From the NCBI RefSeq assembly GCF_964204865.1, contig NC_135254.1, positions 10,664,001 to 10,728,000 of the forward strand: DNA of 64,000 nucleotides, written 5' to 3'. The position numbers and the translations under genes are program-made. This stretch comes from Styela clava (taxonomy: Eukaryota). The notes under the pieces are model-generated. The model was not told the DNA's origin. It ran no database searches and was given only the letters and a program-made list of their open reading frames with translations. Positions within the stretch are counted from its first letter, which is position 1. Each line of letters opens with the position of its first letter. Positions 29,428 to 63,829 of the stretch are shown here, piece after piece.

Positions 29428-29614
29428 GGTGACCGTACATTTGAACCCATGTACATTTGAACCCATGTGTATATCCGCGGGTTCAATCAATATGCGGGTT
29501 CTAAAACCCATGGGTTAGGTTAGTATGAGTACAAATATCCGTAAAACCAAAAAAATTTCCATAGGTGCAATGGCATGCAGGTGCAATTGTCGTGGGTTCA
29601 AATGTAAAGAAACC
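29428..29614. mobile_element. MITE with 9-bp TSD (Mutator- or Merlin-like) in V2 intron 5
   Basis: GTCAAAACA duplicated at 29419-29427 and 29615-29623. TIR core TACATTTGAACCCA / TGGGTTCAAATGTA. Empty site in V1 and V3. Confidence 0.88.
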
Positions 29615-31460: not shown

Positions 31461-32747
31461 CAGTGGTTCCCAAACTTTTTTGACCCCTAAAGTAGTATAT
31501 ACAACTTCATCAGGGTTCTACCTCCTCAAAAACCGCCGTGTACTCTTGCTTTATAGCATTTCACTTCCTAAATTCATCCCATTTCACATTAAAATAATGA
31601 AAACAAAGTTCGTAATAATAATTTTCGTACATCTCATTCATTCCTACAGCCTGATGACTGGCAACAAAATACTTCGGAAAAATTCATCCCCGATTCCTCA
31701 TCCTACCACGGCCTCCAGTCCGATCACCAGTCCATAGAATTAATCAGCCATTTGTTTTTGGATTCATGGACTCACATGTGGAAGAAGCCGTGACCGACTA
31801 TCGGCTACTGCCCAGGGGTCGGCAAAGATTATGTCGCTCGTGGGACAAAATTTAGGGTTGCTAGTCTTTTGCGGGTCCAATATATTTTTTGAAAGTTAAA
31901 AATGGTACAGTACGAAAACTGCGACAATTCGTGAACTCAACTCAGTCGTCTTATTAAAAAATTATTTCAAATGACATTCAACGTGACACTGTCTTGTTGC
32001 TGTATCACGCTTGATAGCTTTACGACGCCAAGATTGGAACATTTTCCAAATGGGCATCACTAACCCCAATTCTTTGCTTGTTCTTTGTAATGTTCATTTT
32101 CAAAAATAATTGTTCGCACAAATATGTACTTCCAAACATCGAAGTGAATATTTTTGCATGGTTTCTGAAATTTTGATGAAGATTTTCTTTAAGAAGATAC
32201 GTTCTTACAAAAATGAAGCAGTGATGAATCTCTCGAATCGAATATGAATTTTATTTTCCTATTGCAAGAATTCTTTTCGATACTTTTAAATAACAGATTG
32301 TTGAATGGTATGAATTAGAAAGATAGTTTGAAACAATTACCCCATTTTACAGGCAACTACTCGCGAAACCACTCTTAAACTAAGCACTGAAAATTTAAAA
32401 ATGGTAAAATATACAAAGAATTTTCCGCAGTCAAAGGTCGGGAAAGGTCCATTCAGTGAATCGACCGGGCCAGATTATTTTACTCCGGCCGTATTTTGCC
32501 GACCACTGGGATACGCAAACTACCGTACTTTACTGCGAAGACGAGTTCAGCAACCCCTTCACGTGTAATAATCGCCCACATGATTCAAGACTGCGAATGC
32601 ACACAGAGTACAGAATTTGGTGCACGATGCGCCAAACAAAAACAGATTACGCGAAATCGCCCCTCTATCGCCCCCTTCGATTTTTTCGCCCCCCTCTGTA
32701 TCGTTTTCTCCCACCGGGGGGCGATATCGCCACTTTGGGAATCACTG
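31461..32747. mobile_element. Non-autonomous hAT element in V2 intron 7
   Basis: TIR CAGTGGTTCCCAAA / TTTGGGAATCACTG with a perfect 8-bp TSD CGCTAGAA. Empty site with a single CGCTAGAA in V3 (about 61734). Confidence 0.93.
31813..32508 (-). mobile_element. Inner hAT element carrying a transposase C-terminal (dimerisation domain) remnant
   Basis: TIR CAGGGGTCGGCAAA / TTTGCCGACCACTG. Minus-strand 32190-32020 reads KENLHQNFRNHAKIFTSMFGSTYLCEQLFLKMNITKNKQRIGVSDAHLEN, resembling the Buster/SPIN-type STYxCEQxFS motif. No TSD. Confidence 0.78.
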
Positions 32748-33394
32748 CGCTAGAACATGCAATTATATGCTTGGTATCACAATTATGTATTTAACTTATA
32801 AGGATCTCAAGACCAAAGAAACCAAGAAGACAAGCGTTCAACTACTCATGAAAAAGGAACCAACAATAAAAATTCACGAAGAAAACACATCTTCGAAGTT
32901 TGCTTGCGTCACTACGACAAATTTGTATATTTCAAGCAACTACGAAATCGTTGTTGAGCAAATATCGGCAAAAACAAACAATCAAAAAAAAACTATATCC
33001 AAAGTTCTTCACAATGCAAATGGGAAGACTGTTATGCGGTTAACGTTTCTTGACTTTGTCTAAGTTATATTCCGGATATCAGACATTTTCAGAAAAAGAT
33101 ATTTTTTACACATACCAACTTGAAACACATGTAAATCTATAAATGTGTGCGTGTTTTTTTCATTCAGTGTATCGGTGGAAACCAAATAAACATATTAGGA
33201 CAATCCGTCTATTATATGCTGATATAGCCACCACCACATTCAGAGTGTAATAAACTGGGTTAGGAATGCGGAACCGGAAATATTCTGGTCCACCAAGCTC
33301 TGTTCTTTATGTATTATTGACTACTTCCATGGTTTCTTATTCGAAATGAAATTGTGGGGAACACTTCATAAAAATAGTGCCAACTGATTACAAC

Positions 33395-35175: not shown

Positions 35176-38100
35176 TCAAGCAGCATATTCACTTTCAGGC
35201 ACTGAATTGATGTACGGATGTTCCTTTGTCATGCTATTATTCATTTCTTCGTATTGATGATTTTCGTCTTTTATTTCTTCATAATTATGCGGGATTTCAT
35301 AATATCCTTCTTTCTCTTCTCCTAACTCATAGTTTCCGGAGTTCAGTTGTGATGTTTGAATTTCATCAATTTTTTCATTAGAACTCGAGACATCATTAAC
35401 AACGTTATTCATCTCTGAAAGACGTTGTGGTTGAGTTGCGATTTTTTGAGAATTCCCTCTGTAAACAACAATAAGCGAAATTAAAAATAAGTTCGAAATA
35501 ATTCATACGTAGGATTTTGAACAAGAAACAAAGACATAGATTGTTTATCGAATTGCTTCCACCATAAATAAAATTGACATCATTGTGATCGATTGACACA
35601 AAACATTGGACGAAAATGTTCTTCCAGTCCAGCATTTCAGACATTTTTCCGGAAAATAAGATTGGGTATACGACTGTATAAAAAGGTTCACTTAACTGAT
35701 TAAATTTAAAGGAAATACTAGAAATTTCCGGAAAATATACACATTTTATTGTAGTATCGAACATTTACTCACCTCATTACTTTGCATCTACGAATCAGCA
35801 AACCAATTCCGAATAAAATAGCTGCGAGAATCAATGTGACTATGGATGAGATAATTGCAACCAATAAATTGTTGTGGTCTGCAATATAATTCAACATATA
35901 CTAAGAATCATGAAACTTAAAAAATCTAACAGGAATTCACCACGAAACAGTACTGAAGAGCGGTTAAACATGAGTTGTAAAAATTTGAAAGTCAGTGAGT
36001 ATATTGTACTACAAAATGGTAGTTTAGAAACTCTAATTTTGTGCACTTCAGACTAATGTCTCCTATAATTTGTAATCTATTTTAATCTTACCAGCCGTTG
36101 TGGTAGTGGTGATTGCACTAGTGGGAAAGAGAATGTTTATCTCCGTAGTTTTTGTGTTGTTTGCAATGGCAGACAATGTGGAAGTATGTGTCATGTAAGT
36201 AGGAGTTGTAAATCCATGATATATATTCGTTGTTGTCATTTCAACAGTTGCCGCGGTGGACGTTCTATTACAGGCAGTGTCTCTCGAACAATTGGCCGTC
36301 TGAATAAAGTAATTGTTATTTAGCAATTTTTCGTTTAATAAATGTACGATAATTTTTTATATATTCCAACAGTTATTTAAATCCGAAATTTAGTGTTCTT
36401 CAAACATTCATAATAATTTAAAAATGCAAAAAATTTAATTCACACGCTAATAAAAAATGTAAATAGTGAATAATTTAGATGAATCAGAAACTTTTTAGGA
36501 GAATTTGTCAATAGCCAGGTCCTGCGCCCTGAATCAGAAGTATCAGAAGTATACACTTTTAAGATCGCAGAAACACTAAGATGGTAAGAATAAAACAACA
36601 TAGAATGATGATATTTTTCTTTAGAGCGCTTTAAAAGATCATAAATCATTGAATTGCTTTATTTCTTACATCAAAATTAGGACCAATGCAAATATTGGGC
36701 CCCGCCCTTCCCGTGTCAATGCATGTCCGATTCCTTACTTTCATCATAGAGCTGCAGTTACATATACTCCACGATGACCAGGTTTCCCAGAATTTTCCTA
36801 CATAGCGTAAAGATAATCATAAGTGTGGTTCCGCTTTTTATTGATTTTGTTGATGATGCAAATTTCCTCTATATCTCATTCTGATTTTCTGATTTTTCAA
36901 TTTATTGTTTTTTACAACTAACTATAGACTCCGAGCCAGATTTATTTTATCATAGTAGAAACTAAGTTAAGTTGGGGTTCGTGTTAAATCTATATATCTC
37001 TTTTAACCTTTTGCGTTTTACCGAAACCCTATTTTTCTAAATAAAGCTAACCAATCGAAACATATTTTTAACTGAATGTGGGAGGTAAACTACCACAATG
37101 CTTGCTTGATGTGTCGGCACGTTTTATCGGAGACAAAAGAAAATCATTTTTAACGGAATTTTAAAATCTTGTGAGCAATGAGAATTTTCCAACGTTAAGG
37201 GATTTTGCTCTGAGAATCTGATCGATGTTATAAAGCACTTACATTTGCAGAAGCACTTTCTACGTTGTGAAGAGTTTTCACACTAAATGCCTAAATCTCT
37301 CTACCTACATCAGGGGTCGGCAACCTACGGCCCGCGGGCAGGATCCAAATCAGGTGTTTTTACGATTATATTCTTTACCTAACAGAATTTATTGCGAGAC
37401 ACGTGTAGACTAAACTATATTATAATCTAACAGGTATAAAATTCACAATTACTCGTTTAATGAGCCTATAATTTCATTATAATTAGACAAATGGCAACAA
37501 AACGCAGAAAAGTTGATGTTAATTGCAAAGGTTCAATGGTGCCGAAAATATTCGAATGAAATTTTTAAGATGCAATGCAATGTATCACTGCTTGATTTTT
37601 ATTATAAAAAGTATTATCCGTTCCGTTTTCAACTTTCTAAAAACATGTGCGGCCCGCCAATGACTTGCAACCCTTAATTTTGGCCCGCGAGCGACAAAAG
37701 GGTTGTCCACCCCTGGCCTACATCTTGCACTAAATATAGATATAGGAAGACTTTTGCAGGTTTAGTAAGTTTTTTTGGTGGTTGTTTGCATGTTTTAGCT
37801 TGATAAATGATAACAGGCAAATAAAAACTTGATTTAAAACAGTTCTCTTTGAAATTAAATATAGCAATTCGATCTGTCACCTCATCATTTCAAATATTTT
37901 TTAATTTTTTATCTTCAATATCACAAAATAACGTTGAAAATTCGCTTCTCCTCGCTGTCGCTAGACATTTTACTCACCGATAATGCGTTGACACACCAAT
38001 CCTTTCGACCCTGTTCCTGTAATACAGTCCATGGTATGCCATAGAAGATCTGTGTCATAAGTATTTTGTTCACCTATCGATACGCAAGTCTCTGTTCCAC

Positions 38101-48154: not shown

Positions 48155-51100
48155 TTATTCAATGTTGTCAATATTTGCATATGGATCATCGTTTACTTCA
48201 ATGTCAGCCCCTTCGGCATCTCCCGTGACATCGGAATTCTGATCTGTTTCAGATTTATTGACCGTTGCATAAGTTACTTCATTGAAGTTTGAAGAATCAT
48301 CTTTTTTGGGTTTCTGTACAACAGCAAGGGTCACTTTATTGTCGTCTCCATCTGAAGATGTTTCCTGTTTCACGGGGTCTTTCGATTTGGTCTTCTGCAC
48401 GGTAGCGTAAGTCGGACCAGGCACTAGCTTTCCATCAAAGGTATTTTCTGGTTGCGACATTTTTTCAGAATCCACAACATTGTGTTTTTGAACCGTTGCG
48501 TAAACCTCAGGGGTGTTCTCGTCAGGATAACAAGAAACATTAATTATTTCGCTCTTTTTTTGCTTATCAACGAAAGCGTATTGAGTTTCTGATACATCTG
48601 CCGCATCCAAATCTTTTGAGGATTTAAATAACTTTTTCGATTTTGTCTTGTTTACAGCAGTATATATAGCATTGTCGTTGCCTTCTGGGGTCACATCGTT
48701 TATCTGATTCTGATGGTTATCGGCAATGGCGTGGAGGGAATCTTGCCCGTTTGATGAGTCAACTTGATCTTCGGGTAAGTGAGAATTATTGTCTGCCTGT
48801 CCATCAGGGTTTACAAACGTCTGATAACGGAGAGTTTCCGTATTTTGAGAATGGTCTCGACCTAATTCCACATCTTCGGGATCTGTAGCAGTAAAACATG
48901 TTAGTGATAAATATTAATATGAAGCAGCTGTTTTGACACACTTGAAGCATTTTCGTTTGGAGGAGTTGGAAAATAGGTCGGAGCCATTCAGATTAACTGA
49001 CTACAGATTTGAATAAGGATTCATACAAGCTATTACCTACTCGAGTTACTTATTTTAATATAATCACCATAACTGAATGCATGATGAAGTTCATTAGAAA
49101 CAACAATTCTGAATTTTTACGTGGAAAGATTCTATTTAGTATCGGTTGGTATCGTTGCAACAGGTTGTGATTTAAATGTAACACCTTTTCTTGTTTTACG
49201 CTTCTCTGTGTAGTATTCCTATATGCTATATATTCTTAATATATTTCCCGCAAAATCACTTTTTTCCCATTAGGCATATAGTTCAAATAAGATAATCATA
49301 TGGTGCACATAGAAATGAGTATTCCTTTTTGTTTGTCATACATTTACTAGCATGTGATGGACAGTAAAGTATAAGAATTCATCAACCCAGATAGAATACG
49401 TTGACGTAATACTTTAAATGAAGTTACATTAACTTACGATCTGACATTATATCTCTCGGATTAAGTTGATTTTCCATTTCTAACCCTTCATTGTAATTAC
49501 AACGATCTCCTGTGTTTATGATTCCGCGGCCTCTGCTGAAAGCAAAACTTTAGATTATATGCATTCTCGGTGAAATGAGTAAACCCCTATTAAAAAGATA
49601 TTTGGTATTTGTTCACTATTCATAAAAGATGTAATGTCATAATGTTGGATATACTACCTTTTTTTGAGTTGCTTTGAAAGTATAAAAACAATGATAAGCG
49701 CTAAAAGAAGAAACCCTCCGATAATTCCCACGACTGGCCCAATAATTGATGTTTGTGCAGCGGGTGTAGATGGACGAAGAATTCCAATCGTCGAAATTTC
49801 AGGAACTTCTGTGTGAGATAATATAGGAATTAATATCAGTACAATATAAATGATCAGAAAATTGATTTAATACATTATGTTCATTTAAACAAGCTGACAC
49901 ATTTTCGCGAGCTGAAACTGAATTTAAAATATTTTGCAACGCTACCATTTGAAAATTAATCGTACGAAAGTTATTTGACTGCTTCATTCTGATGTTATAC
50001 ATTTGAACATTCTAATTGGTCTTTTGATCGATGAACAAATGTTGGCCACGTTCTCGCGTGCATTTTAATAAATGACTCAATTGTAGAAAAGGTGAAACTG
50101 ATTGTATAAACTTATGATTTGTTATGGTAAACTATTGCTAATGCTGTTATAATCATCCCACGTTACGTTTGTTGGTATTATTTGAATTTGGTTTAAGGCG
50201 GATTTTGCCAATATTAACTCTGATCAAATATAGATTGTTGCTTTCATGCAGCTACTAGTATAGGATCAAGCCATAAAATTATAAATTGCTGTTATTTTGC
50301 GCGTTGCGTGTTGATTGCTACTAGATTCCGGATTGGTAATGACTGTAAAATTCTGCTCAAAGCTTGTAGTGGCGGCAGTAGACGTGGAATCAGTGTTTGT
50401 GGGAGTAGAATCAAACTGAGTAATTCTTCCGGTGGTTGTTTTCATTACAGTTGTTGCTGTAGACAAAATGGGTGATGTGACTTCAAAATTACTTCCTTCG
50501 CTCGTTTCGTACGTTGATTGTCTAATTGTACTTGCAGGGATAGTGGTTTCCAATGAGCTACTTGGTATTTCTGCGCTACCGAAAGTTGTCTCATTTGCCA
50601 TCGTCGTTCTCCTCTCATTTATCTGTGTGAGAGACATGGTTGAAGGCCTGTAATCATCGTGCTTTCCGTATTAAAAGCGTGGCTGATCGGCGATCTGGAT
50701 AGTTGAATGGGCAAAAATTTATGCCCGTTCAGTGCTATTAATTCTAAATTTAGATGTGAATTAAAAAGTCACTGTCGTCATTTGGTCTTGTTCCGTACCT
50801 GCGAATGAAGATGAAGTGCCGTGCAAGTTAAAGGTTGCGTTTGCCACAACATACACACCGGTAGTCATGGTAGTCATTACGTCGGTGGGTTCTTCGTTTG
50901 TGGACGAGGTGGTTAACTCACCAGCAGTTGTAGTTAATTGAAATGTGGTTTCCGCAACTGTAGTCGTATAACAAGCCGGGTCTTTTGTACAATTTGCAGT
51001 CTGTTAAAAATATTAAATCAAACTAAGGGAAAATTGAAATTGATCACTATTATTACTATTCCCAAACAGTACTTTTAAATGGCAAAAGTTTCTGTAACAT

Positions 51101-54100
51101 ACCCGGAAAGCAATAATATTTTAAATATACACAGGCTATGATATACAATAGTATCACTCTGATTATTCCACCGCCAAAACGATTTGATCATGCCGTGGAA
51201 ATAAGTTCGACGTTATACGCTATATTATTTTGAGGTTCAAGACCCTCTCTAACATGCTTAAGTAGATTATTCCGAATGGAGAATGCCATCACTTTATAAC
51301 GTGGTTACTCGAGAATGAAAAACTATCATTTGATATAGCTGTGAATAAATTTGACATCGAGTTAAAGCTACACTGCAGTACAAAACTGCAGATAAAATAA
51401 ACAACAACGACGACAAAAAAATAATAAAATGTACACATTAAATATTTAGCTTCTACATACCTCATTGCGGCTGCCAGCGCAGGCATCGAGCCTTGTTCGC
51501 GGAGAATTAATGCATGTGCGATTTCTCAATTTGATTATGGTTGAGCAGTTACATTCACTCCAAGAAGACCAGGTTCCCCAGTATTTACCTATATTGGAAC
51601 TGTTATTTTTTTATAAATGCAATCAGCTAGATAGTAATATATATAGATATACAAAGGGGGTTTTCAGCAAAGTTCTAACTTTCTAACAAACTTTTTTGCA
51701 AAATGTTCTCGAATCTTCATAAGATCCTGAACTACCATCCGTTGGAACATAGTATTCATAACTTCCATTAGAAAACCAGATTCCTCGATCTGTTTCACCA
51801 ATTAAATATCAAATAATAGAATAATGACAGTATCTCGAAAAATGCGCAGTGAAAATGCGTGAGCTAGTGAAAACAATTGAAAAATAATTACGAAAAATAG
51901 TTGGCTTTGGCGTGACTCATATGGAAGCGAATAACAGAGCCCATTGTTCATATATCCCATCTCTTTTCCCCGACGATTGCAATAAGTGTCCAGTTTGATG
52001 GGAAATGAAGACGTAACATGGGTTTTTCATTCTCACCTTGTGGAGTCGGAGCTGTGGTCACTAACGGCATAGTTGCATTGCAGGAAGCGGATGGCGTGCA
52101 TATCTAAAAACAACGTTCAATTTGTTCAATCGTGCATGTAGGTGTTTTAACTAAACTAAATGTAAGTCAAAAATTTAATATTTAATGTAGAATGATCAAA
52201 AAATGATTGGCAATGAAATCCGAATTAGTTGGGTCCGGACTGAAGGGTTCGCAAGTCACATTCAAAATTGGATTATGGAAATATTTTGATACGTCAATCA
52301 ATCTGAATTAGTAACAAAATACGACTAAACTGACTTGAATAAATTTACCTGGGTGGCAATTCTAGGTGTGGCTATTAATGTCGTCGATGAAGTTAGGGAC
52401 AAAAATCTACAAAACGGTTGTTATATAACGTAATTGAGTCTCAACATGGATATGTATGGGTATTTTTTTTTTATTTCATTGGAAAGTTAGTTTTCGAACG
52501 ACACACTAATCGACATGCTAGGACCCTATAAAATCCTAAACTTAAATTTAATAGTTATCAAAATAGCCAGGTAATAAGGAAGCATTTTGAACGAAAACAC
52601 AATCATAATGAGCTATATACAGTGGTGGGATTCAGCCGGTTCGCACCGGTTCTATAGAACCGTCTCACGGAATTTTATGAGATCAGCGAACCGGTTAGCA
52701 TTACTGGTTACTGTCAATGTTATATTTGTAACAGATCCGGCTGAAAAAGATGACTTTAGTGAAGGAACCGGCTGACAAAAAATTTGAACCCACCACTGGT
52801 TATATATATATATATATATGTAAAACAATTTTACTTCAAACTGTGATGCCGTATCGTTGCATGAGTATGGACCAATTCTTCCGCTGTCAACACAAGTTCG
52901 GTTTCGCTGCCTCATTCCGGGGCATTCACAGCTTCCCCAGGACTCCCATGATCCCCAATTCCAGCCTGCAGAAACATGTAGATTAAAATATTCGTTATAT
53001 ATTTTACAACCGAGTATTTCAAAGCAATATGATATCAGTAAATTTAAATCAAGATGAACTGTTAATACAATATGAGCGGTAGAAAAAATAGCATAGCTGT
53101 GCATAGTATAAATAACGATGAGATGACATTATGGAAACGTTAAAACATTTTCAAAATCTTTCCTGCACTTATAGCTAATCGAAAAAAGTTTTGTACGGAA
53201 TATTTTAGATGAAATTCAGCTGACACGTTTTTGGCGGTTTTATCGAAAACTGAGATTTCTTCTGACAGTAATTTAATAATATGGCGCTGCTTTCTTTATT
53301 AAACATAATTTATCCAGTTAAATTTAAAACATCTGACCCAGTTAACTCAATTCTCATTTTTTTATAGGAGATTTTACTCAAAGAAAAGTCAGTCGCAATC
53401 ACTCGAAAAATGTAAACTAGTGTCTGATTAAAATGCGCGCAGTCGCAGAGATGCCAAGTGCTACTGAAATCAAACAGTATTTTAATGGTGCAATAAGCAA
53501 CAGCGAATACCTGATGAAGTGATACTTGAAGCACTTTAAATCGATGCTATAAAGTATGAGGCAGTAAACATGGCATGAATAAAATTTACTAGATTGGAGT
53601 CAATGTCATTAAAAATATATAAATATTTATTTGTATAAAGAAATAGAAATTGCGTGGAAAATTTAGTATACATTTATTACAAATAAAGTTTTTTACCGAT
53701 TACTCGTTGACAGACAAATGCAGTTGGCGAATTCGCAGTGCAATTGACGTCATACCACGGTAGATTTGCATAATACGTGTGCCACCACCCCATAGCAACA
53801 CAAGGTTCAGGTTTATCACTAGAAGGTTCTCCTGAGTTCCAGTTAGTGTAAGTTAGTTCCGAATTGTCATTCCAGATGAAGGTATCGTTTGTGCCAACTT
53901 CCTTTAATCCAATATAAAACCCATAGGGTTGTCCTGTAGACAATAAGATGCTTTAGAGCAGAATTTCCCAAACTGGGCTCCCTTAGCTTAATTGAGCAGT
54001 AAAAAGCATTAATGACGTTTGTGTTGCTACATATATGAAACATTATCCTTCCTCATCCTTTCTCCTGGTTAGACACATAAATTGATTCGGCATACCATAG

Positions 54101-54719
54101 GGATCCGACAAAACTAAGATTTACAAATATGGGTACGCGACTTAAAAAGTTTGGGAAACCCTGCTTCAGATTAATGGAAAGTTATGTAAGGTTGTATGTA
54201 AACATGGCTGGTTAGGACTGTTGTACATAATTGAAAACAGGTAAAACAAATACGTAAAGACTGACGAATTAAAAATTCTCAAACCAACGTATTGAGAATT
54301 CCAACACAAATCCCAAAACGCATGAACAAAGATAAAAATCATAATGTTAAATAACCTTAAGCAAATTCATTTCGGGATTTGGGGTAAAACGTGAAATGTC
54401 TTGTTTACCTGAGGTAGCTGAGACTTGATTCTGAATAAACATTTGAATCTCGCTAGTTTTTATCATTGCTATCTCACCATCATTGTTTTTACAGAATGTT
54501 TCACCATCAACATAGGATTTTTTATCATCTTTTCCAGATACGTAGTATTGGTAACTTCCAAATGCATTCCACTTACCTCTACCTTGTCGTAAAATAAAGA
54601 GTTTATGAATAAGCACATCATTTGAAAGTCATGATGATATATAGTATATGCCAACCTGCGCTAACGACGGCAACCATCCAAGCAAAAATCCCAACGAATA
54701 TCAAAAGATTCTCCTTCAT
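48155..54719 (-). CDS. A2: SP-CTL-TSP1-TSP1-stalk-TM-ITIM/ITSM tail receptor (about 639 aa if the broken CTL2 exon is skipped)
   Basis: Exons 54719-54656, 54582-54409, 53933-53697, 52965-52835, 52103-52037, 51588-51461, 51000-50859, 49808-49658, 49535-49438, 48882-48155 total 1920 nt, open. A truncated CTL2 exon remnant lies at 51789-51692. Tail TQYAFV, EVYATV, PTYATV, VTYATV. Confidence 0.8.
52620..52798. mobile_element. hAT-type MITE in A2 intron 4
   Basis: TIR CAGTGGTGGGATTCA / TGAACCCACCACTG; TSD GCTATATA / GTTATATA. Empty at the paralogous B1 and B2 sites. Confidence 0.85.
53959..54163. mobile_element. Short hAT-type MITE in A2 intron 2
   Basis: Same termini and position as 20-223; left TSD CTTTAGAG. 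Confidence 0.75.
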
Positions 54720-57035
54720 TTCCGCGCTAATTATCTAACTTTCTTACCCCATAACATTCTTATTTGAATCCAAAAATTGAATAAAACGAGATTGATATAT
54801 ACCAGATAGGGAAAACTAACGAGTAACGACATAAACTTCTCAAGACAATAGTAAAACATCAAAATCTATGAATCGATTAGATAACACTACTACATATCTA
54901 CAAAGCAAATAATTCAATGCATAATACTTCATGCCATAACTAGGAACGAATGATTTGATTGCCCACAATAGCATTAAATGTAAATATTCGAAAATTTTTG
55001 ATATTATATTTAGTACACTGCAACTAAAGTTCATATTACTAGCCGCATTACTTCCATTATCAGAAGAGTGATGCAGATAAGACCTTAATTCGACTTGCCG
55101 GGATGAAATCATAAGCAATATGATCTGACAGTTCTTACCTTACAATAACTAAGTCTAATATGAGTAATGAAGTTAATAAAGATAATATTTTTATAGAATA
55201 CAAAATGAAACTTCCTATTACGAGTGGGATGTTTGAATAACCTCCTAGTCACAACATTTTTGAAATTACAGCAAAGAGATGATTAATGACGAATATGCTT
55301 CAGGAGAAAATACTTATTACAAGACTGATTAGCCTTGTTATGCGGTATTCTCTAGTCACCTATGTTTATCTCAAGATTGGCCTATTTAGTTGAGATTTGA
55401 ACGCAACAATTGTTTCTTTCCTAAAAATAAATATCTGTATCATATTTTAATATATGAATTGTTTCTAATATTGGACGAGTTATTTAATATGAAATCTTTG
55501 ATTCTGGTTTCACCGATCAACTCAAATTATTCGCTTATGTTGAAAATGATATTTCGATCATATTCTGTTTGTTTTTGTAGTATAATAAACAATAACCATA
55601 ATAAAGTAATAAATATTTATTTCACGAATGACACATGAATAACAGACGGAAAAAATGAAAGAATTGTATTGTTTGCTACATTGATTGGCTAATTGGTTGT
55701 GTTTTCCGTTTTGGCTTCTACTACAGAAGCCATACGATAACCATTACTATGGCCTTCTTACTAAGGAAATGCATGTCGAGAAAACAACAACGGAGAATAT
55801 GACCAATCTAAGCAGAACGAAGATGGAAATTACATAAACAACAACTATTAAAGTCATACATGAATATCATGACAACTTTATAAGCAAAGTCTGGTAAAGC
55901 GATGAATATTGTGGGCTATACTAGAGTTTTAACCTAATAAAAGTTTAGTAATCTCTTGTGACTGACTGCTGTGCTATCGTAAATGACAGAAGGATTATTG
56001 AACCATCATTCAAAATACACAATTCGATATTTGTAGAAAAATTATTCATTTATAAAATAATAAATACATGAGTTCAAATCAATTTCGTTTTGTGGAACAA
56101 AAAAAAAACATAAAATTCAAAAATATGTTGAAATAAATGAACGATTGTTGGTAAATGAGATGAATTCAGGTTTTAAGTTACACACAAAAAAATTAAATTA
56201 TATGTAACAACATGATTTCTCGAAAATCATTCTTTCTCCTAAGGGGTGTAATTAGACACTTTTATTTTCCATTGCAGAAATGAGTGTAACATTACGATGA
56301 TGACTTGTGCAACAAACACTATTTTCTGAAAGTAGAAGTGTGAGCTACATATTTAGTGACAACTTGTGTTTATTTGGTATGTGTATGTGACTCGTCGAAT
56401 TTTTTAGAATTTGACCAAGTTTTGGGAAAGTTTAACGAAATTTGATTCAAAAATTACGATTATATATTGTAAACTGGATTTTAGAGATACACTAAAATAA
56501 CTGTTCACGTTTTGGCGTTTGCGAAAATGATTCACTGAAATAATTAGTCATAAAAAACGAACCTTGTTGATCCCCTCGCATTTAATTGATCATAGTATAG
56601 TTAAATCTGTATTCAATTTGCATTTGTTCGTTTATCATTGCATTTTAGCCACTTGTGCTGTATATTTGAAAAATATGGGAATTTTGCACTGCGACTGAAT
56701 ATCTCGAACCGAAATTAGAATGGCGATAACAAGCAGTGATATGTAAATGGGGCATTGACGCATGTATCAAGCGCACGTATTTGACTTATTGTACATATTT
56801 TCAATTTCAATAATATATGAAAGAATAATATACTAGTGGCATAGGTAACTAAATGCCAAGGATTTATCAATTCTTTGTGGAAGAAATTTCTTTAAAATGT
56901 TTTGGTATTTTTATTATTCATTTTGTTTAACAGAGCGTTTAACGTTTTTCAGAGCTAATCATTTTTACTGCTAGTTACATGCGCAAAGCATTACAATCTA
57001 TATTTGAATTTTGTCAGCTTATATGATTCAGAAGA

Positions 57036-60000
57036 ATGAGAATCGAATTAATATTTTTGTTGGTTCTTCTTCAATATCCGAGGCATCTGAACGCAGCAGG
57101 TATTATTTCATTGTTATGACTTTTTTTTTAGAAAATTCACTGAAAACAAGGTTACTCATACAGGTATAAGGGAGATTGATCTGATCAAAGATTTTGAGAC
57201 TATAAGAGCTTAAAGGATAGAATTGAGTGTTGGTAAATACCGATCGGCACTAAACTTAAAAGCAGTTCATATCAATACAATCAGTAAAAGATGTGTGAGG
57301 TATTGAATTCCATATACATGGAGTTTTTGGAATGATCTTAGAAATTATAGGTACACTAACAGTAAACTGATGAGAGCTCACAGTCAATCGTATTTAACGG
57401 CTGAAAACATTTTAGGGGGACAATATTCACATTTTTGAACATTTAGTAAGCGGTAACAACGGTTGCCTGACAATATGAAATGGTAAAATTTGTTTAGATA
57501 ATATAGGATTACATTACGTTATGTCTCAAATAATAATTTATTTTGCCAGAATGTCGGGAAACGCCCATGGATCTTGTATTTATGCTGGATGGATCGGGTT
57601 CTATCACAAATGTGAATTGGGAGCTTATGAAGTCATGGGTCAAGTTGGTAGCAGAAAATTATGACTTAGGCGGATTAACACAGATTGGCGTCGTTCAGTT
57701 CTCACACTGGTTTTCAAATGAGAAGTAAGCTATAGAAAGAGATTTCATTTTATTTAATTAGATTTTAAGCCGCATTTATAAATAATTTATTTAAATTATT
57801 TGAAAGCAGCTGCTCTATTAGTCAAGATCAAATTGCCTAGAAACAGCTGCCATGACATGTATTTGGCTTAACTTTGTGGCGAAGAATGATTCCTTCTTAA
57901 GCGTCAAATGAGATCATCATGATCACCATAGTTGTCAAAATTATGTCAACAGTGTTTTAGCTCTGTTGTGTATTTTAGTGCTTTATTAAAAATTAACAAG
58001 GAATTAGTTTTGATCGTTTTCCACTTTGTTCCACTTCGCTGCGAGTGTTTTTACGACTTTTATCTGGGTACAGTAAGACTAAGATACATTCTTCTAAAAT
58101 CATTTTCGGCGTTTGTTTGTATTTTCAAATTCATTGTTATTCAATAAAAAAAATTCGATAAAATAATTTTCATTTTCTTTTCATAGCACACAGCCCTATT
58201 TAAAAACTGAAATTCAGCTAGGAAAACTGAAGACCAAAGCCCAATTGAAGGTAAAATATTCATCAAGGGTTGAGCAGTCGAGACTGGTACCGTCACGGTA
58301 AGATCAGACCACAGTTCTTGCTGATGAGGTATCGAACATGGCGGAATAAAAAGTATTCCTCTCTAATTAAAATACAATAGTAAACTTTCGAGATAATCAT
58401 TTGGTTCTATAATTTTTTTAAAAAATTCCATCCGTAACAACAACAAAAAACAAAACCCAGAATTTAGCATATTTTAGATTCACATGTACAATGAACGCAG
58501 TTGCAAAACAAAGCTAGTGAGATAGTTTGGGGTCACGTTCTATGCGAAAAAGAACTAAAGTTATATTTGTCGTATGAATTGTCTTATTTAACGATTTGTT
58601 CACAAAATTGTGATACCTTCAGAATTCAAAATGCAATTAGCTTTAAATTAATAACTGAGTATTCTTTAGGCCGCTGTTGACGAAATATCAATTCATGGAT
58701 TCACAACTTACACTGCACATGCTATCAACAAAACAGTGAACGAAGATTTCATGAGATCTGATCGTTTTTATGATGCTTCAGTGAAGAAAGTCATTATTTT
58801 ATTTACAGATGGAAGGTAATAACTTGTGTGTACGTCTGAATACACGTAAAATGCACCTTTGAATTGTATCGTTAACTGTTGTTAATGTTTTTGTTATTAT
58901 TGTTAATGTTTACGGTTCTTGTAAGGGTAGTTAGCAGAGTTCTTTTGATATATCCGTATATTTAGCCCTTTGTTTTTCAACTTGGGTTTCTGCGCGATAT
59001 ATATTATTTTTATACCATCAAGATATTAGTTGTTGAAAATCTAAATAAATGTTATTTCAAAGCTGATTACTACTTTATTATTTACCAAATTATTCTAATC
59101 TTAGACATCAAAAAATTAAGAAGTAGTATAAAACCGTTTTCGTTTTGCTCGATTTATTGAAGGTATGCTCGTGTAACAAGTCTTAAATATGTGTGTAGAT
59201 TGTAGATAATTTTTTAAATCTTTTGAAGATCTACCGACAGAAATGATTTGCTTTTGTCAGCAAAATATGCTCGGTCAAATGGGATTACTATATTTGCAGT
59301 TGGTGCTGGAGGTTATGTAATGGAGGAATTACAGGTAATCTGAAAAGTTGTAACAAATTGAAATAAGAGAAATTTTATGTTTCAATATATTATAGCTTTT
59401 CTACCTTTTGTCTAATCAATATATTTCTGTGTATCAAAGATTGTTCATCAACAAGACTGAGAAAGTATAACCAAATTAGTTATCAGGATAAAACTCTTTT
59501 TGACTGAGATTGATAAGTAACAATGTAGGCTACTGTAGTTGTTTAAATGTTCTTTCTATTTGGGCATTCGTGAGTGAGACCAGCTTCTTCTCTGTTTCTT
59601 ATATCTGGGATTGGCAAAACATATTTCATTCAAATAATATTTTTCTATTAAATAATTAGGCATGATGCATGGATAAATGACGTATCGCGGGAGCTCGAGC
59701 TGATATGCGACTGGCGACGTTCCATTTAATCACTGTAGCCCCAGTGGTGATGACATTTGTGACTGCGAGCACACTTGATTTGGATTAGACGCCCAGATAG
59801 ACGCCCAGGATCTCCGCTGATACATGAGGCTCGTTCTCCAGCAAAACGTTAAGTCATGCATGCAAAATTGCAGATCAATAACGGCAGTGTATTGCGGAAC
59901 TGCCAGTTTATTTGGACGCTGCGCGGCTCTTCAGCATCTCAGCTTGTGCGATTGTCTGTGGCTAATTGTCAAAACATGTTCACTTGAATTCCTAACTTCC

Positions 60001-62175
60001 ACAAATCGATACATCCATACGTTTGATATCAGAGCACTTTGTTTCCTTATTGCAAACCATAATACACTGCATTTGATGAATGATCTCGTTTGCAATGAAT
60101 TTTCCATTAGGAATAATTACTATAGTGACGCTATGATTCGAGTCTTTGCCACCATTCACGTTTTGCCTGTGCTTGAACGTATTTGAATAAACAGCGCTAG
60201 GATTGAGGGCATGGACGTGCCTTTGCTGCTGTCCAGTATGAAGTTATGATAATGATGCCCCCCAACTTCAAAAATAATTCGGGGGATAAACAAATTAAAG
60301 CTGTTGCTATACATGAGAATGAATGAATTAAAGGTCACGTATGAGGGGAATCTTTGGAAATATGTGATAAATCACGCAATGACCAGACGAGCACATTGGC
60401 GGACAAGAGCGGTCAGCCACCATCATCATCACAATCAGTCACACATGACCATTCACGTCATGTCAACTTTACTTGAATAAAACACATACAGAGAAAAATG
60501 TGTAATATCGTGAACTCTACAGCTTGGATCTGCTGCCTCTCCCCCGCTGGCCCGCCCCAGAGTGAGGATGAAATTCACTTAGTCTAGGTTGAATTAAATG
60601 TTTCAAGCATGGTCTCTACTAGCACAATAAATCGCTTCTCAAATATCTCAATACCTGTATCTTGAAAAAACAGATTCGAGCTATGTTCATCTATAGATCA
60701 TAGTTGAATTATACCCGAGGAAATTTGAACTCGACCTCGGCAAAAACAACTTTGTGTTGGCATGTAATAAGACTCCGGCATCCCTTTTAATTTAGCTTTC
60801 TCTGGTATGATTGTCTCCATTACGATTTTAATATTCATAGTTCTAGCAAATTTTATTTATGTCTTTGTGTTCATTTTTAACTACATAGTTCAATTGGGAT
60901 CATATGAGTAGGAAATAACAAATAAAACGGTAACTAAAATATTTTTTTAGTAACGAACAAGACCTAACCTCGTATAGCTTGACTACAACGGATGTTTAAA
61001 CCGAAACATATAAAAATCAACTTTTATTCACAGATTATTGCAAATGGCCAGGTCAATAACAATGAACGAGTGATCACAGTTTCAAATTTTACTAGGCTGA
61101 ATACTACGGTAGACATTTTAAAGCAAGGTATATGTGCTATCCAAGGTAATGTTGATATTAATAGTCAGTTTTTTATTGAGGCTGCTACGATGTGTTAGTA
61201 GCATATAATTTCGAACTACGTTTTCAAAAAATTCTTTGCGCCCGAATCTGATATTGAGCCAAGACACTATAATAAATAAATGTTCCACATTTCGACGCCT
61301 AAGCTGAAATGATATTCGATTTTTGTTTTGTTAAAATCAGTGGATTATAAGATGTTTTGCAGGCTATCACAACAGAATTAACGATTGAAATTTATTTTCT
61401 CGTTTTCGAAAAGAATTTCGTTCAAAGCGCAGAACATATAATAACTCATTTCCTACAGATTTTATAGCATATAATATAGAAATTCACATTCACCACAAGT
61501 TATAACAGCTGAAATGTACAAATTAAAGAGGGAATTATATAAGATTCAAAAAAATATTTATATTCGTTTATAGTTCCCTTCATAGTGTCTCGCTACACTT
61601 GCACAACTTCATCGCTGGAAGTTCAATGGGAAACAACTACATTTAAGTCGGTCTTCTCATACAGACTTCAAATTCAGGTTGCCTTTATAAATAGAATGAA
61701 AATCATTACATTGGTCTAAACATTTTTACTGTGCGCTAGAACTTGCCATTTCATGCTAAATATCACATTTATGTATTTAACTTATAGGATCTCAAGACCA
61801 AAGAAATCAAGAAGACAAGCGTTCAGTTACTCATGAAAAAGGAACCAACAATAAAAATTCACGGAGAAAACACATCTTCGAAGTTTGCTTGCGTCACTAC
61901 GACAAATTTGTATATTTCAAGCAACTACGAAATCGTTGTTGAGCAAATATCGGCAAAAACAAACAATCAAATAAAAACCATATCCAAAGTTCTTCACAAT
62001 GCAAATGGGAAGACTATTATGCGGTTAACGTTTCTTGATTTTGTCTAAGTTATATTCCGGATATCAGACATTTTCAAAAAAAAAAATTGTTTTACACATA
62101 CCAACTTAAAACACATGTAAATCTATAAATGTGTGCGTGTTTTTTTCATTCAGTCTATCGGTGGAAACCAAATAA
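57036..62175 (+). CDS. V3: intact secreted vWA + FN3-like protein (about 342 aa)
   Basis: Exons 57036-57099, 57550-57724, 58187-58250, 58670-58815, 59229-59334, 61034-61145, 61574-61677, 61788-62023, 62154-62175 (alternatively exon 8 reads to a stop at 62048). MIDAS DGSGS..T..TDG. FN3-like SLEVQW...SYRLQI...NLYISSNYEIVV. No TM segment. Confidence 0.85.
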
Positions 62176-63829
62176 ACATATTAGGAAAATCCATCTATTA
62201 TATGCTGATATAGCCACCACCACATTCAGAGTGTAATAAACTGGGTTAGGAATGCGCAACCGGAAATATTCTTGTCCGCCAAGCTCTGTTCTTTATGTAT
62301 TATTTACTACTTCTGGTTTCTTATTCGAGGTGAAAGTGTAGATAACACTTCATAAAAATATTGTCAACTGACTACAGCTCCAAACTTGATTGGAATCCTG
62401 ATTCAAATTGATGATACATTCAATTATTCAGGATGTACTTGGGCATTTGATAATGGCAAGGAAAGCCAACATTGCTTCACAACGCAATCGGACTCAGTTC
62501 AGATGAATTAAACTAAATGTTCTTTTTTTCATTCAGATTTTAGCTTTGTCAAAAAGTTATCACCATCCAGTGTAAATAGATTGAAATCTTGTTTTCAAAT
62601 TTATAAGGAAAATAGGTCGATTTTTTTTTAAATTTCCAAACTCGCTTTCGAGATCAATTTGCTTTGACTCATTCTAATGGAATATTTACTAAGAACTCAT
62701 TTCACACTTGGTAAATAAAAACAAAATGAATATAATAAATTTTGATTGTATTTATCGATAGTATTTTAGTCTTGGAGAAATCGTCATTACCAATAATTAA
62801 TTTTTAGTACGAGACTAAATCATTTAGTTTATACTTTATCGAATACCTTATTGCCCAACTTAAGGACAGTCAGCTAACTAAAGAAAATCACTCGAGCATG
62901 TATGTTTTTACGTGGGGACATTTGTTTTACGTCACAATTCACAAATACCGCAATCGATGTTATGCTACGGTTCACATCATGAGAAAGCGTTTACCAAGAT
63001 TTTATATATATGTGATTTTTGTTTAATTTGGAAAATTTTAGGTCAGGATGGTCCAAGGTTGTCGGCTCCGCGGGCCACAAAATTATTTTTGCATGGTTCG
63101 CGGGCCACAATAGTGCCAAGAATAGGTAAACAGTGCAATACAAAACAAACTCTTTCATTGTGCAAACACATAGTTATCAGGCAAAGCCATTCTAGGCTAA
63201 TAGAAGCCGCATTCGATTTTTAGTTTTCTCTGATGCATATATTCTCGTTAGCATATATTCCCGATCAAATAGTTAAAAACCTGATAATAATTTAGACTGA
63301 CAAGCACATTATTTAACTTCGCTAGTTGACTCAGCTAGCCATAACACTATTTAATTCAGTGACATTATAAACACTTGAGCGAAATCAAGTAATCTTTGAA
63401 GTGATATATATATTCACTATATGGTCGTAAATTCTATTATTCTTGTATGAATATGTCAGTTCAGGATTTCTTGATAGTGTTGATAAAAAATTACAAGAAA
63501 TTCCGTTTAAATGATAACACGCATATCCTCATTCAAATTTATGTTTAATCTGACTACTTTACAAGTCTTTATCAAGAATGTAACTAACTGAAGCGAGTCA
63601 TATGAAAGCATATTATATTTTCTGCTCATCCTTTATTCAAAGTATTGACATGCAATGCAAATAGGAAAGTGTGAACTTATCACTTAGTCCTATAGCATTA
63701 AATAATATGACGATATCACCAAGCTTCAAATTATTAAATAACAATTATTGCAATAAGAATGTCAGTGGCACCTACAAACAAAAAAGAAACAAACTTTACA
63801 AAAATGTGTTTCTAATTTAGAAGGAAACA

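What the first reader, a model, noticed from the sequence alone, without database searches (positions are those of the whole stretch)
54719..62175. Secreted vWA-FN3 gene head-to-head with the inhibitory receptor in every unit: linked ligand or co-factor candidate
Seen: all three A genes are divergently paired with a V gene at 2.3-2.5 kb ATG-to-ATG, and V is tail-to-tail with B. V has a signal peptide, complete MIDAS, several N-glycosylation sequons (NKT, NFT, NTT), an FN3-like domain and no TM. Known: receptor and ligand genes are physically linked in several recognition systems (NKR-P1/Clr; s-/v-Themis self-sterility pairs in Ciona). Inference: V may be a co-regulated ligand, opsonin or self-marker read by the A/B lectins. 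Co-duplication as a passenger is an equally valid explanation.
Basis: partly seen in the sequence, partly recalled or inferred. Interest (0 to 1): 0.75.

Follow-up and report, generated by a model that had tools for sequence, protein, structure and literature searches.

The report
Secreted VWA gene beside lectin receptors
In the sea squirt Styela clava, a small secreted adhesion-type (VWA) protein gene sits back-to-back with a lectin receptor gene in every copy of a young tandem repeat; copying of one ancestral pair explains this, and it does not prove that the two proteins work together.

Summary
The layout is real. Three V loci (+ strand) each lie 2.3-2.55 kb, ATG to ATG, from the first exon of a tail-A C-type-lectin receptor gene (- strand), and a tail-B exon follows each.

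Only V3 is intact. V2 has a stop in exon 2. V1 lacks most of exon 8 and one acceptor. V3 has 8 exons and 343 codons: signal peptide, VWA domain with DxSxS/T/D motif, four sequons, no second hydrophobic stretch. RNA contigs from three studies confirm introns 1-4. The FN3 call is unproven.

The window is part of a ~330-kb Styela clava array with 14 V loci and 24 lectin first-domain exons. All 14 V are head-to-head with a lectin gene, but 8 partners carry the B tail, not A.

V copies are conserved (dN/dS about 0.3). They change about four times slower than the neighbouring lectin domain and do not co-vary with it. The nearest outside relatives of either gene are unlinked.

So the pairing is one ancestral event, copied. 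V is a working, lineage-restricted secreted VWA protein. Binding to the lectins is untested. The scan reached the same reading on the neighbouring window (s1-817487).

The parts
57036..57099 (+). V3 exon 1: ATG and signal-peptide-like hydrophobic segment (21 full codons)
   Evidence: RNA contigs start at 57013 and splice 57099 to 57550 in 4 of 4 runs.
57550..57724 (+). V3 exon 2: start of the VWA domain, with a Cys before the domain and DGSGS (the DxSxS of MIDAS)
   Evidence: Pfam VWA 1.3e-09, 39 bits, above the 23.8 cut-off. Aligns to collagen VI and integrin alpha-M/alpha-X A domains. Junction 57724 to 58187 in 3 of 4 runs.
58187..58250 (+). V3 exon 3 (VWA, 64 nt)
   Evidence: Junction to 58670 in 2 of 4 runs; the other two runs carry variant joints.
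58670..58815 (+). V3 exon 4: VWA, with the T of GFTTYT, the D of LFTDG and the sequon NKT
   Evidence: Pfam VWA profile positions 67-113, E 0.0029. Junction 58815 to 59229 in 4 of 4 runs. Sequon.
59229..59334 (+). V3 exon 5 (VWA)
   Evidence: Pfam VWA profile positions 116-148, E 0.02. Loose end behind 59334 reads into exon 6 in 3 of 4 runs.
61034..61145 (+). V3 exon 6: end of VWA, with the second flanking Cys and the sequons NFT and NTT
   Evidence: Joined to exons 5 and 7 in the RefSeq fragment P0001, which comes from a sister copy.
61574..61677 (+). V3 exon 7: first half of the C-terminal all-beta domain (Cys, then Trp nine residues later)
   Evidence: No Pfam hit on its own.
61788..62048 (+). 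V3 exon 8: second half of the C-terminal domain, sequon NTS, stop TAA
   Evidence: Only 3 hits among 1.84 billion representative proteins, all from Styela clava.
62171..62176 (+). AATAAA, 123 nt after the V3 stop (likely poly-A signal)
   Evidence: motif only.
55656..57035 (.). V-proximal half of the intergenic region. It is uniformly similar among 10 units (mean K 0.068), like V introns, and travels with V.
54720..55655 (.). Lectin-proximal half of the intergenic region. It falls into two haplogroups (K about 0.23 between them) and is rich in indels, so its history differs from that of V.
   Evidence: No RNA contig between 54813 and 56522 in any of 4 runs.
54656..54719 (-). A3 exon 1 (ATG and signal peptide), head-to-head with V3
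   Evidence: Exon 1-2 junction (54656 to about 54581) in RNA contigs of 2 of 4 runs.
54409..54581 (-). A3 exon 2, first half of C-type lectin domain 1
   Evidence: Pfam Lectin_C profile positions 2-36. RNA contigs and loose ends at 54408.
53680..53952 (-). Open segment holding A3 exon 3, second half of C-type lectin domain 1
   Evidence: Pfam Lectin_C 4.4e-10, 40.7 bits, above the 22.6 cut-off.
48158..48913 (-). A3 tail-A exon (five Y-x-x-V/I motifs)
   Evidence: Tail-A exons occur only in this array (11 matches, all C5 10.55-10.85 Mb).
26284..33063 (+). V2: all 8 exons present, but TAA at 26912-26914 in exon 2; intron 7 is 1405 nt
3203..8732 (+). V1: exon 7 acceptor changed (gg for ag); exon 8 homologous for only about 35 codons, then unrelated sequence and a stop
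23676..23738 (-). A2 exon 1, head-to-head with V2 (2546 bp ATG to ATG)
725..787 (-). A1 exon 1, head-to-head with V1 (2416 bp ATG to ATG)
35179..35502 (-). B2 tail-B exon, tail-to-tail with V2 (2.1 kb after its stop)
9581..9886 (-). B1 tail-B exon, tail-to-tail with V1

Best explanation
V is a Styela-restricted gene for a small secreted protein. It has a signal peptide, one collagen-VI/integrin-type VWA domain with the full MIDAS motif set, and a C-terminal all-beta domain of about 120 residues and uncertain fold.

V probably arose by exon shuffling. A multi-VWA gene 300 kb away has the same exon pattern. The C-terminal two-exon module also ends unrelated EGF-rich giant proteins and a further tandem family on contig C2.

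One ancestral segment [lectin 5' end <- -> V -> <- tail-B end] was copied again and again. This built an array of about 330 kb with 14 V loci and 24 lectin receptor first-domain exons. That copying is why V is head-to-head with a lectin gene in every unit.

V plus 1.4 kb of its own upstream DNA behaves as one homogenised block. Purifying selection keeps it, while single copies die by stops and deletions (birth and death).

Most likely V acts by itself as a metal-ion-dependent adhesive or bridging protein of matrix, tunic or blood. It is not matched copy by copy to the receptor next to it.

Shown here: anatomy, splicing, array structure, constraint, lack of co-variation. Inferred: secretion, metal dependence, the exon-shuffling origin, and the absence of a specific tie to the lectins.
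For: Gene model and VWA domain. Splicing and transcription: and the RefSeq fragment P0001, which joins exons 5-8 as modelled.

Array structure:
- 14 exon 8 places and 14 exon 2 places, all on the + strand at C5 10.52-10.83 Mb.
- 20 lectin signal-exon matches, 14 of them 2.26-2.62 kb upstream of a V start.
- Tail-A and tail-B exons occur only in this array.
- 24 first-domain exons at 73% identity or more, of which 14 have a V, 1 has a lone V exon 1, and 9 have none.
- Partner tail is A for 6 of 14 and B for 8 of 14.

Single origin: the outside lectin relatives (C18 15.69/15.70 Mb, C5 10.486 and 10.849 Mb, 52-55% identity) have no V exon 2 or exon 8 match nearby. The nearest VWA relative has no lectin marker in 10 kb.

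Constraint: over 45 pairs of V copies, mean dS is 0.073 and mean dN 0.023. Exon lengths are unchanged in intact copies while intron lengths vary. A crude neutral model expects 1.8 nonsense and 3.6 frameshift hits per copy, so P(intact) is 0.005; 7 of 12 are intact.

No co-variation: lectin domain 1 has dS 0.183 and dN 0.099 over 105 pairs, and the Spearman correlation of V dN with partner dN is -0.003.

Separate histories of the two halves of the intergenic region.

Lineage restriction: 3 hits among 1.84 billion representatives, all Styela clava.
Against: - Adjacency is never broken for V (14 of 14), although 9 lectin genes do without V. Selection keeps V.
- V and lectin 5' exons are both present in the same RNA runs.
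- C-type lectin-like proteins are known to bind VWA domains: bitiscetins bind VWF A1 and A3 (abstract of PMC9024624, listed).
- V carries four sequons that a lectin could read.

None of these is excluded by my data. I had no tissue-level expression, no allelic polymorphism data and no binding test.

The dN correlation uses non-independent pairs. Gene conversion of V could also hide older co-variation.
Confidence: 0.58

Rival explanations
1. V is a constant soluble partner of the whole receptor array, serving A and B types alike. It could be a bridging opsonin or co-factor. Its MIDAS face would bind a target or the receptor stalk, and the lectin domains would read its glycans or surface. On this view V is kept beside the receptors so that they are expressed together.
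For: 14 of 14 V are head-to-head with a lectin 5' end, and 13 of 14 are followed by a tail-B exon. V is under purifying selection and nearly invariant while the lectins diversify, as expected for a shared partner. Both are transcribed in the same runs. Four sequons are present. There is precedent for C-type lectin-like proteins binding VWA domains (abstract of PMC9024624) and for linked receptor and secreted-ligand genes in the related Botryllus (passages of PMC12582321).
Against: The adjacency is one event copied. Nine of 24 lectin first-domain exons have no V, and at least 5 of 14 V are broken, including 2 of the 3 in the window. The outermost RNA contig ends of the two genes lie about 2.27 kb apart with no shared conserved core, and the two halves of the intergenic DNA have different histories. 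There is no binding, co-expression or synteny evidence.
Confidence: 0.22
2. V is a variable self-marker or matched ligand. Each V would be read by the receptor encoded next to it, as in the Ciona s-/v-Themis pairs or the Botryllus fuhc ligand.
For: Tight physical pairing. The receptor family has two tail types, like paired inhibitory and activating receptors.
Against: V copies are 93-100% identical per exon at protein level. V dN is 0.023 against 0.099 for lectin domain 1, with no correlation across unit pairs. Partner type is mixed: 6 A and 8 B. Several V are dead while their partner's first lectin-domain exons read open. Allelic polymorphism was not examined.
Confidence: 0.05
3. V copies are functionless passengers, decaying after being dragged along by selection for more lectin genes.
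For: At least 5 of 14 copies are broken and 1 more is doubtful. The array is young, with intron K about 0.07 in the main group.
Against: dN/dS is about 0.3. There are no exon indels in 7 intact copies, against many intron indels. P(7 or more of 12 intact under neutrality) is about 3e-14 under a crude star model. Spliced RNA contigs come from three studies.
Confidence: 0.05

Closest known systems
VWA1 / WARP (vertebrate extracellular-matrix protein)
   Same: A signal sequence, one N-terminal VWA domain, then beta-rich module(s). It is small and secreted, with no membrane anchor. WARP is described as 445 aa, with a VWFA domain followed by two fibronectin type III repeats, and it binds perlecan and collagen VI (passages of PMC8263055).
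   Different: V has 343 codons and one C-terminal domain. That domain fails the fn3 cut-off and does not model as FN3. No orthology was shown. V is a 14-copy tandem family inside a lectin receptor array.
Collagen VI, integrin alpha-M/alpha-X I domains, VWF A domains (solved VWA domains)
   Same: These are the best sequence matches of exon 2 in the PDB: collagen VI alpha-3 at 2.7e-24 summed over its repeats, integrin alpha-M at 6.8e-06. They share the DxSxS start, and a Cys lies on each side of the domain as in VWF A domains (the latter point is recalled).
   Different: Those are large multidomain or membrane proteins. V is a single-VWA secreted protein.
NKR-P1 / Clr in the rodent NK gene complex (recalled, no paper read)
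   Same: Lectin-type receptor genes, some inhibitory and some activating, are interspersed with genes for their ligands in one cluster.
   Different: Clr ligands are themselves C-type lectin-like membrane proteins related to the receptors, and their binding is shown. Here the neighbour is an unrelated secreted VWA protein and no binding is known.
Botryllus schlosseri fuhc locus (same family, Styelidae)
   Same: Multigene receptor families with ITIM or ITAM-type motifs sit in linked haplotypes, and a secreted protein (fuhc-sec, 550 aa) acts as ligand (passages of PMC12582321).
   Different: The receptors there are the fester families, not C-type lectins, and the ligand is hyper-polymorphic. That paper has 0 occurrences of 'von Willebrand', 'VWA' or 'Styela'. 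V copies are nearly invariant.
Ciona s-Themis / v-Themis self-sterility pairs
   Same: Tightly linked receptor and ligand gene pairs in an ascidian (title of PMC7018956 in the listing; details recalled).
   Different: Those pairs are multi-allelic and co-evolving, and they act in gametes. V shows no co-variation with its neighbour.
[quoted passage not shown]
   Same: They show that a C-type lectin fold can bind a VWA domain as a protein ligand (abstract of PMC9024624).
   Different: They are venom heterodimers acting on another species' protein, with no genomic linkage.

Membership tests
VWA domain (Pfam PF00092) | Profile match at or above the gathering score | tested here: met
   Exon 2 alone scores 39.0 bits against 23.8. 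Exons 4 and 5 match profile positions 67-113 and 116-148 in order, each below the cut-off on its own.
VWA domain with MIDAS | DxSxS at the end of the first strand | tested here: met
   DGSGS aligns with the DGS motif of collagen VI A domains. It is present in 11 of the 12 fully examined copies; Vf has a stop inside it.
VWA domain with MIDAS | The conserved Thr and Asp that complete the metal site | tested here: inconclusive
   A T in GFTTYT and a D in LFTDG stand where the motif is expected. This was read by motif only, not aligned residue by residue to a solved MIDAS.
VWA domain with MIDAS | Metal-dependent ligand binding | not testable with these tools
   Needs protein work.
Fibronectin type III (Pfam PF00041) | Profile match at or above the gathering score | tested here: not met
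   No hit for exon 7 or exon 8. P0001 gives E 2.5e-4 and 21.6 bits, below 25. Atlas neighbours are fn3 clusters, but only at 0.85-0.88, which is a lead only.
Fibronectin type III | Seven-strand beta-sandwich fold | tested here: inconclusive
   In the model from an 18-row alignment, the domain has block pLDDT of 62-92 (at least 72 in all but the last three residues) and forms nine consecutive hairpin strands. Foldseek finds nothing at E 0.001 or better. The best VIA matches are propeller blades at Z 8-9.3, near background, with no FN3 or Ig chain in the 50 entries listed. The alignment is shallow, so the topology may be wrong.
VWA1 / WARP | VWA followed by two FN3 repeats; orthology | tested here: not met
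   V has one C-terminal domain that is not demonstrably FN3. The family was found only in Styela clava.
Linked receptor-ligand recognition system | Physical linkage of the receptor and candidate ligand genes | tested here: met
   14 of 14 V lie 2.26-2.62 kb from a lectin first exon, but this traces to a single origin.
Linked receptor-ligand recognition system | Co-variation of the ligand with its neighbouring receptor | tested here: not met
   Spearman -0.003 over 45 unit pairs. V dN is 0.023 against lectin dN 0.099. This compares paralogues only.
Linked receptor-ligand recognition system | Allelic polymorphism of the ligand | not tested
Linked receptor-ligand recognition system | Direct binding | not testable with these tools
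   No multimer prediction or assay was available.
Bidirectional-promoter gene pair | Transcript starts less than about 1 kb apart (usual definition, recalled) | tested here: not met
   The outermost RNA contig ends are 54739 (lectin) and 57013 (V), 2274 bp apart, with no contig at 54813-56522 in any of 4 runs. Contigs cannot fix true starts.
C-type lectin domain (partner gene, Pfam PF00059) | Profile match at or above the gathering score | tested here: met
   A3 second half-domain scores 40.7 bits against 22.6, and the first half matches profile positions 2-36. TSP_1 scores 19.2 bits, below 21.6.

The most novel reading that the evidence does not exclude
V is the common soluble component of a lectin-based paired-receptor system in a solitary styelid. 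It would be a nearly invariant, glycosylated, MIDAS-bearing protein deposited on self or on targets. Diversified inhibitory-type (tail A) and activating-type (tail B) CTLD-TSP1 receptors would then read it. Each receptor gene would keep its own V copy head-to-head so that the two are made together. That would be a chordate recognition module with no described counterpart, built from a Styela-specific chimeric gene.
Probability: 0.15. Interest if true: 0.75.

Novelty: new member of a known kind. Interest (0 to 1): 0.35.

Why it matters
[quoted passage not shown] Their self/non-self and innate recognition systems are lineage-specific and poorly known outside Botryllus and Ciona.

This array joins two things. 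One is a diversifying lectin receptor family with two tail types. The other is a constrained, secreted VWA protein found only in Styela clava in a library of 1.84 billion representatives.

If V proved to be the receptors' partner, it would give a tractable receptor-ligand pair in a solitary ascidian. As the evidence stands, the lesson is cautionary: perfect repetition of a gene pair in a tandem array is one observation, not fourteen. Two of the three 'ligand' copies in this window are dead.

Tried and rejected
- FN3 by sequence. Exon-by-exon Pfam gave nothing for exons 7 and 8. A profile of the exon 8 alignment against PDB sequences gave only noise, E 0.1 or worse.
- FN3 by structure. The second (A2) was usable but matched no FN3 or Ig fold.
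- Shared promoter. An alignment of 10 intergenic regions showed no block more conserved than V introns. The V-proximal half has K 0.068, against 0.077 for intron 1.
- Structured RNA in 54000-64000. There were no Rfam matches.
- The GC-richer patch in V3 intron 5. Part of it (about 60210-60540) is a dispersed repeat with 514 first-look candidates on many contigs. The rest is shared by the V copies. It is not a separate gene.
- Synteny in other species was not possible. No other tunicate genome is reachable, and the exon 8 domain has no hit outside Styela clava.
- Print searches (Styela clava with C-type lectin, von Willebrand, hemocytes, genome; ascidian with C-type lectin, ITIM, thrombospondin) listed no paper on this array. 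I read listings only, except passages of PMC12582321 and PMC8263055. Supplements were closed and might hold gene lists.
- The joined step was left out. I never built or searched a full-length spliced V protein. Domains were searched exon by exon, and the C-terminal half was studied through the RefSeq fragment P0001.

Full report
WHAT THE WINDOW IS

The window has about 33% G+C, no N, and split genes. It is contig C5:10664001-10728000 of a 377-Mb genome. An exon 8 query found a RefSeq protein of Styela clava on a contig of exactly the same length, 24,897,793 bases. The organism is therefore the solitary ascidian Styela clava.

THE V3 GENE

By eye and then by phase tracking I built an 8-exon GT-AG model on the + strand:
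- exon 1: 57036-57099
- exon 2: 57550-57724
- exon 3: 58187-58250
- exon 4: 58670-58815
- exon 5: 59229-59334
- exon 6: 61034-61145
- exon 7: 61574-61677
- exon 8: 61788-62048

The total is 1032 nt, or 343 codons ending in TAA.

Logan contigs of four runs from three studies are marked 'RNA?' by the tool. They cover exons and not introns or intergenic DNA. They carry these features:
- the junction 57099/57550 in 4 of 4 runs
- the junction 57724/58187 in 3 of 4 runs
- the junction 58250/58670 in 2 of 4 runs, with variant joints in the other two
- the junction 58815/59229 in 4 of 4 runs
- a loose end behind 59334 that reads into exon 6 in 3 of 4 runs

The RefSeq fragment P0001 (163 aa) belongs to the sister copy at C5:10773325. 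It joins exons 5 to 8 exactly as in my model.

All searches were made exon by exon.

WHAT V3 ENCODES

- Exon 1 is a short hydrophobic leader; its maximum 19-residue hydropathy is 1.12, the highest of the gene.
- Exons 2, 4 and 5 match Pfam VWA colinearly at profile positions 1-47, 67-113 and 116-148. Exon 2 alone scores above the curated cut-off.
- In the PDB the closest sequences are A domains of collagen VI, integrin alpha-M/alpha-X and VWF, plus a mussel thread matrix protein.
- The MIDAS signature is present by motif: DGSGS, a Thr in GFTTYT, an Asp in LFTDG. A Cys lies on each side of the domain.
- There are four N-glycosylation sequons (NKT, NFT, NTT, NTS) and no second hydrophobic stretch.

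THE C-TERMINAL DOMAIN

Evidence about the fold:
- Exons 7 and 8 give no fn3 hit.
- P0001 gives fn3 at E 2.5e-4 and 21.6 bits, under the gathering score of 25.
- Language-model neighbours are fn3 clusters, but at 0.85-0.88, which the tool calls a lead only.
- A first AlphaFold model was useless, with pLDDT 36.
- An 18-row alignment that added the exon 7 and exon 8 equivalents of relatives gave a better model. Overall pLDDT is 70.9, and the 10-residue blocks covering residues 41-160 run 72-92.
- That model is a run of nine hairpin-connected strands.
- Foldseek found nothing at E 0.001 or better.
- The Foldseek-independent search gave propeller-blade segments at Z 8-9.3, which is close to the tool's stated background. 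No FN3 or Ig chain appeared among the 50 entries listed.

I call it an all-beta domain of uncertain fold.

The domain is a Styela speciality. Among 1.84 billion representative proteins, exon 8 hits only P0001 and two EGF-rich giants of S. clava, of 1121 and 2255 aa, which end in the same domain. In the genome it also ends a tandem family on C2. In that family the domain is split into two exons at the same point.

The closest VWA relative is a multi-VWA gene at C5:10.211-10.221 Mb. It has V-like exons 2-6, and its exon 4 is 70-74% identical to that of V.

Together this suggests that V is a chimera made by exon shuffling. This is inference.

THE OTHER TWO V LOCI IN THE WINDOW ARE BROKEN

- V2 (26284-33063) has all exons, but TAA replaces TAT at 26912-26914 in exon 2.
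- V1 (3203-8732) has tatgg instead of tatag at the exon 7 acceptor. Its exon 8 is homologous for only about 35 codons, then runs into unrelated sequence and a stop.

THE LAYOUT IN THE WINDOW

The neighbours on the - strand are receptor genes. Each has a signal exon, two C-type lectin domains, thrombospondin-type repeats (Pfam TSP_1, under its cut-off), a Ser/Thr-rich stalk, a membrane span, and one of two tails.

ATG-to-ATG distances are 2416, 2546 and 2317 bp.

Of the tail-A tyrosine motifs, one fits the usual ITIM consensus and one fits the ITSM consensus. I read these, and the consensus sequences are recalled. 'Inhibitory' therefore remains a label, not a result.

THE WHOLE ARRAY

I fetched 160 kb upstream and 20 kb downstream. 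Own-genome searches gave the coordinates of the rest. The array runs from C5 10.51 to 10.85 Mb.

Counts:
- 14 V loci, all on the + strand.
- 24 first lectin-domain exons at 73% identity or more, all but one on the - strand.
- Tail-A and tail-B exons are found nowhere else in the genome.

Pairing:
- Every V (14 of 14) has a lectin signal exon upstream. Twelve distances were measured at 2317-2620 bp. Two were inferred at about 2.26 kb.
- 13 of 14 V are followed within 2-2.9 kb by a tail-B exon.
- The head-to-head partner has tail A in only 6 of 14 and tail B in 8 of 14. For the four downstream V, the partner's tail type was assigned from the nearest tail exon below the signal exon, so it is inferred.
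- In the left half of the array the repeat is a 13.4-kb unit [B <- -> V].
- 9 of the 24 lectin first-domain exons have no V, and one has only a lone V exon 1.

State of the V copies (12 examined across all exons):
- 7 are intact.
- 1 is doubtful, with an 8-nt insertion at the exon 3 acceptor.
- 4 are broken.
- A thirteenth copy has two stops in exon 8.
- One copy was not examined fully.

HOW V EVOLVES COMPARED WITH ITS NEIGHBOUR

I counted substitutions exon by exon with the Nei-Gojobori method.
- Over 45 pairs of V copies, mean dS is 0.073 and mean dN 0.023. Introns have mean K of 0.112.
- Exons keep their length in the intact copies, while intron lengths vary widely.
- With the intron substitution and indel rates of the main group, a crude star model expects 1.8 nonsense and 3.6 frameshift hits per copy, so P(intact) is 0.005. 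The observed figure is 7 of 12. The copies are not independent and gene conversion can repair them, so this is only an order-of-magnitude argument.
- Lectin domain 1 has mean dS 0.183 and mean dN 0.099. The median dN/dS is 0.54, and 8 of 105 pairs exceed 1.
- Among the three A genes of the window, dN/dS is 0.93-1.06.
- V dN does not track the partner's dN (Spearman -0.003 over 45 non-independent pairs).

THE INTERGENIC DNA

The intergenic DNA splits near 55650.
- The lectin-proximal kilobase falls into two haplogroups with K about 0.23 between them.
- The 1.4 kb next to V is uniformly similar (K 0.068). It is no more conserved than V intron 1.

V and its own upstream DNA therefore form one homogenised block whose history is uncoupled from that of the lectin gene.

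No RNA contig lies between 54813 and 56522 in any of the four runs. The outermost contig ends of the two genes are 2274 bp apart.

IS THE LINKAGE OLDER THAN THE ARRAY?

The nearest lectin relatives outside the array are at C5 10.486 and 10.849 Mb and at C18 15.69/15.70 Mb, at 52-55% identity. They have no V exon 2 or exon 8 match near them. The nearest VWA relative has no lectin marker in the 10 kb fetched. The pairing is therefore one evolutionary event, multiplied.

READING

The layout is explained by tandem copying of one ancestral segment, followed by concerted evolution of the V block and by birth and death of single copies. V is not junk: it is expressed, spliced and constrained.

The data speak against three ideas:
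- a copy-matched ligand or self-marker
- a special tie to the tail-A (inhibitory-type) genes
- a compact shared promoter

The data do not speak against a constant soluble partner for the whole receptor family. That idea has three things in its favour:
- the unbroken adjacency
- the sequons
- precedent, both for C-type lectin-like proteins that bind VWA domains (abstract of PMC9024624) and for linked receptor and secreted-ligand genes in the related Botryllus (passages of PMC12582321)

By architecture, the closest known protein is the matrix protein WARP/VWA1, a VWFA domain plus two FN3 repeats (passages of PMC8263055). Membership fails on the FN3 test.

An earlier follow-up of this scan on the neighbouring window (s1-817487) reached the same conclusion. 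I tested it independently here.

Limits:
- There is no tissue-resolved expression.
- There is no allelic data.
- There is no other tunicate genome.
- Paper supplements were closed.

Noticed in passing
L015, L017 (C3 18.63-18.65 Mb); L019-L030 (C2 11.5-12.6 and 24.3 Mb): The C-terminal domain of V is a two-exon module. The same module ends EGF-rich giant proteins (P0002 of 1121 aa, P0003 of 2255 aa) and a tandem family on C2. The exon split falls at the same point, and a Cys, a Trp and a second Cys are conserved. It looks like a Styela-specific shuffled module of unknown fold.
   Followed up: partly
L047 (C5:10211001-10221000), - strand: A gene with at least two tandem VWA units, each split into V-like exons 2-6. 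Its exon 4 is 70-74% identical to that of V. It is the likely source or sister of the VWA part of V. There are no lectin markers in this 10 kb.
   Followed up: partly
window 54720-55655 and its equivalents in 9 other units: The lectin-proximal half of the intergenic region has two haplogroups (K about 0.23). The minor group (the units of Vf, Vg and V2) holds 3 of 3 broken V copies, against 1 broken and 1 doubtful of 7 in the major group. This could be chance (about 1 in 30 if the doubtful copy is counted as intact).
   Followed up: partly
window 53680-54628 (A3), 22713-23650 (A2), 1-696 (A1): Lectin domain 1 of the three tail-A genes in the window has dN/dS of 0.93-1.06. Changes are concentrated in the loop region around the EPS / W-x-D positions. 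The adjacent V has dN/dS of about 0.25.
   Followed up: partly
L046:3099-3826 (C5:10657099-10657826), just before the window: The tail-A exon of A1, the partner of V1, has a TAG, and its match is split over two frames. A1 may be a pseudogene, like V1.
   Followed up: no
C5:10619669-10635076 (L042-L044): One tail-B gene carries three repeats of the CTLD2-TSP1 cassette, so the ectodomain has grown by internal duplication.
   Followed up: no
window 60210-60540 (V3 intron 5): A dispersed repeat at 70-80% identity, with 514 first-look candidates on many contigs. It is also present in intron 5 of other V copies, so it was inserted before the array grew.
   Followed up: yes
window 56576-56752: One 177-nt contig of run X3 (depth 4.9, 4 differences) lies in the otherwise silent intergenic region. 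It overlaps a stretch (56481-56699) that recurs inverted at 33395-33613, downstream of V2. It may be a repeat transcript or an upstream non-coding exon. It is unexplained.
   Followed up: no
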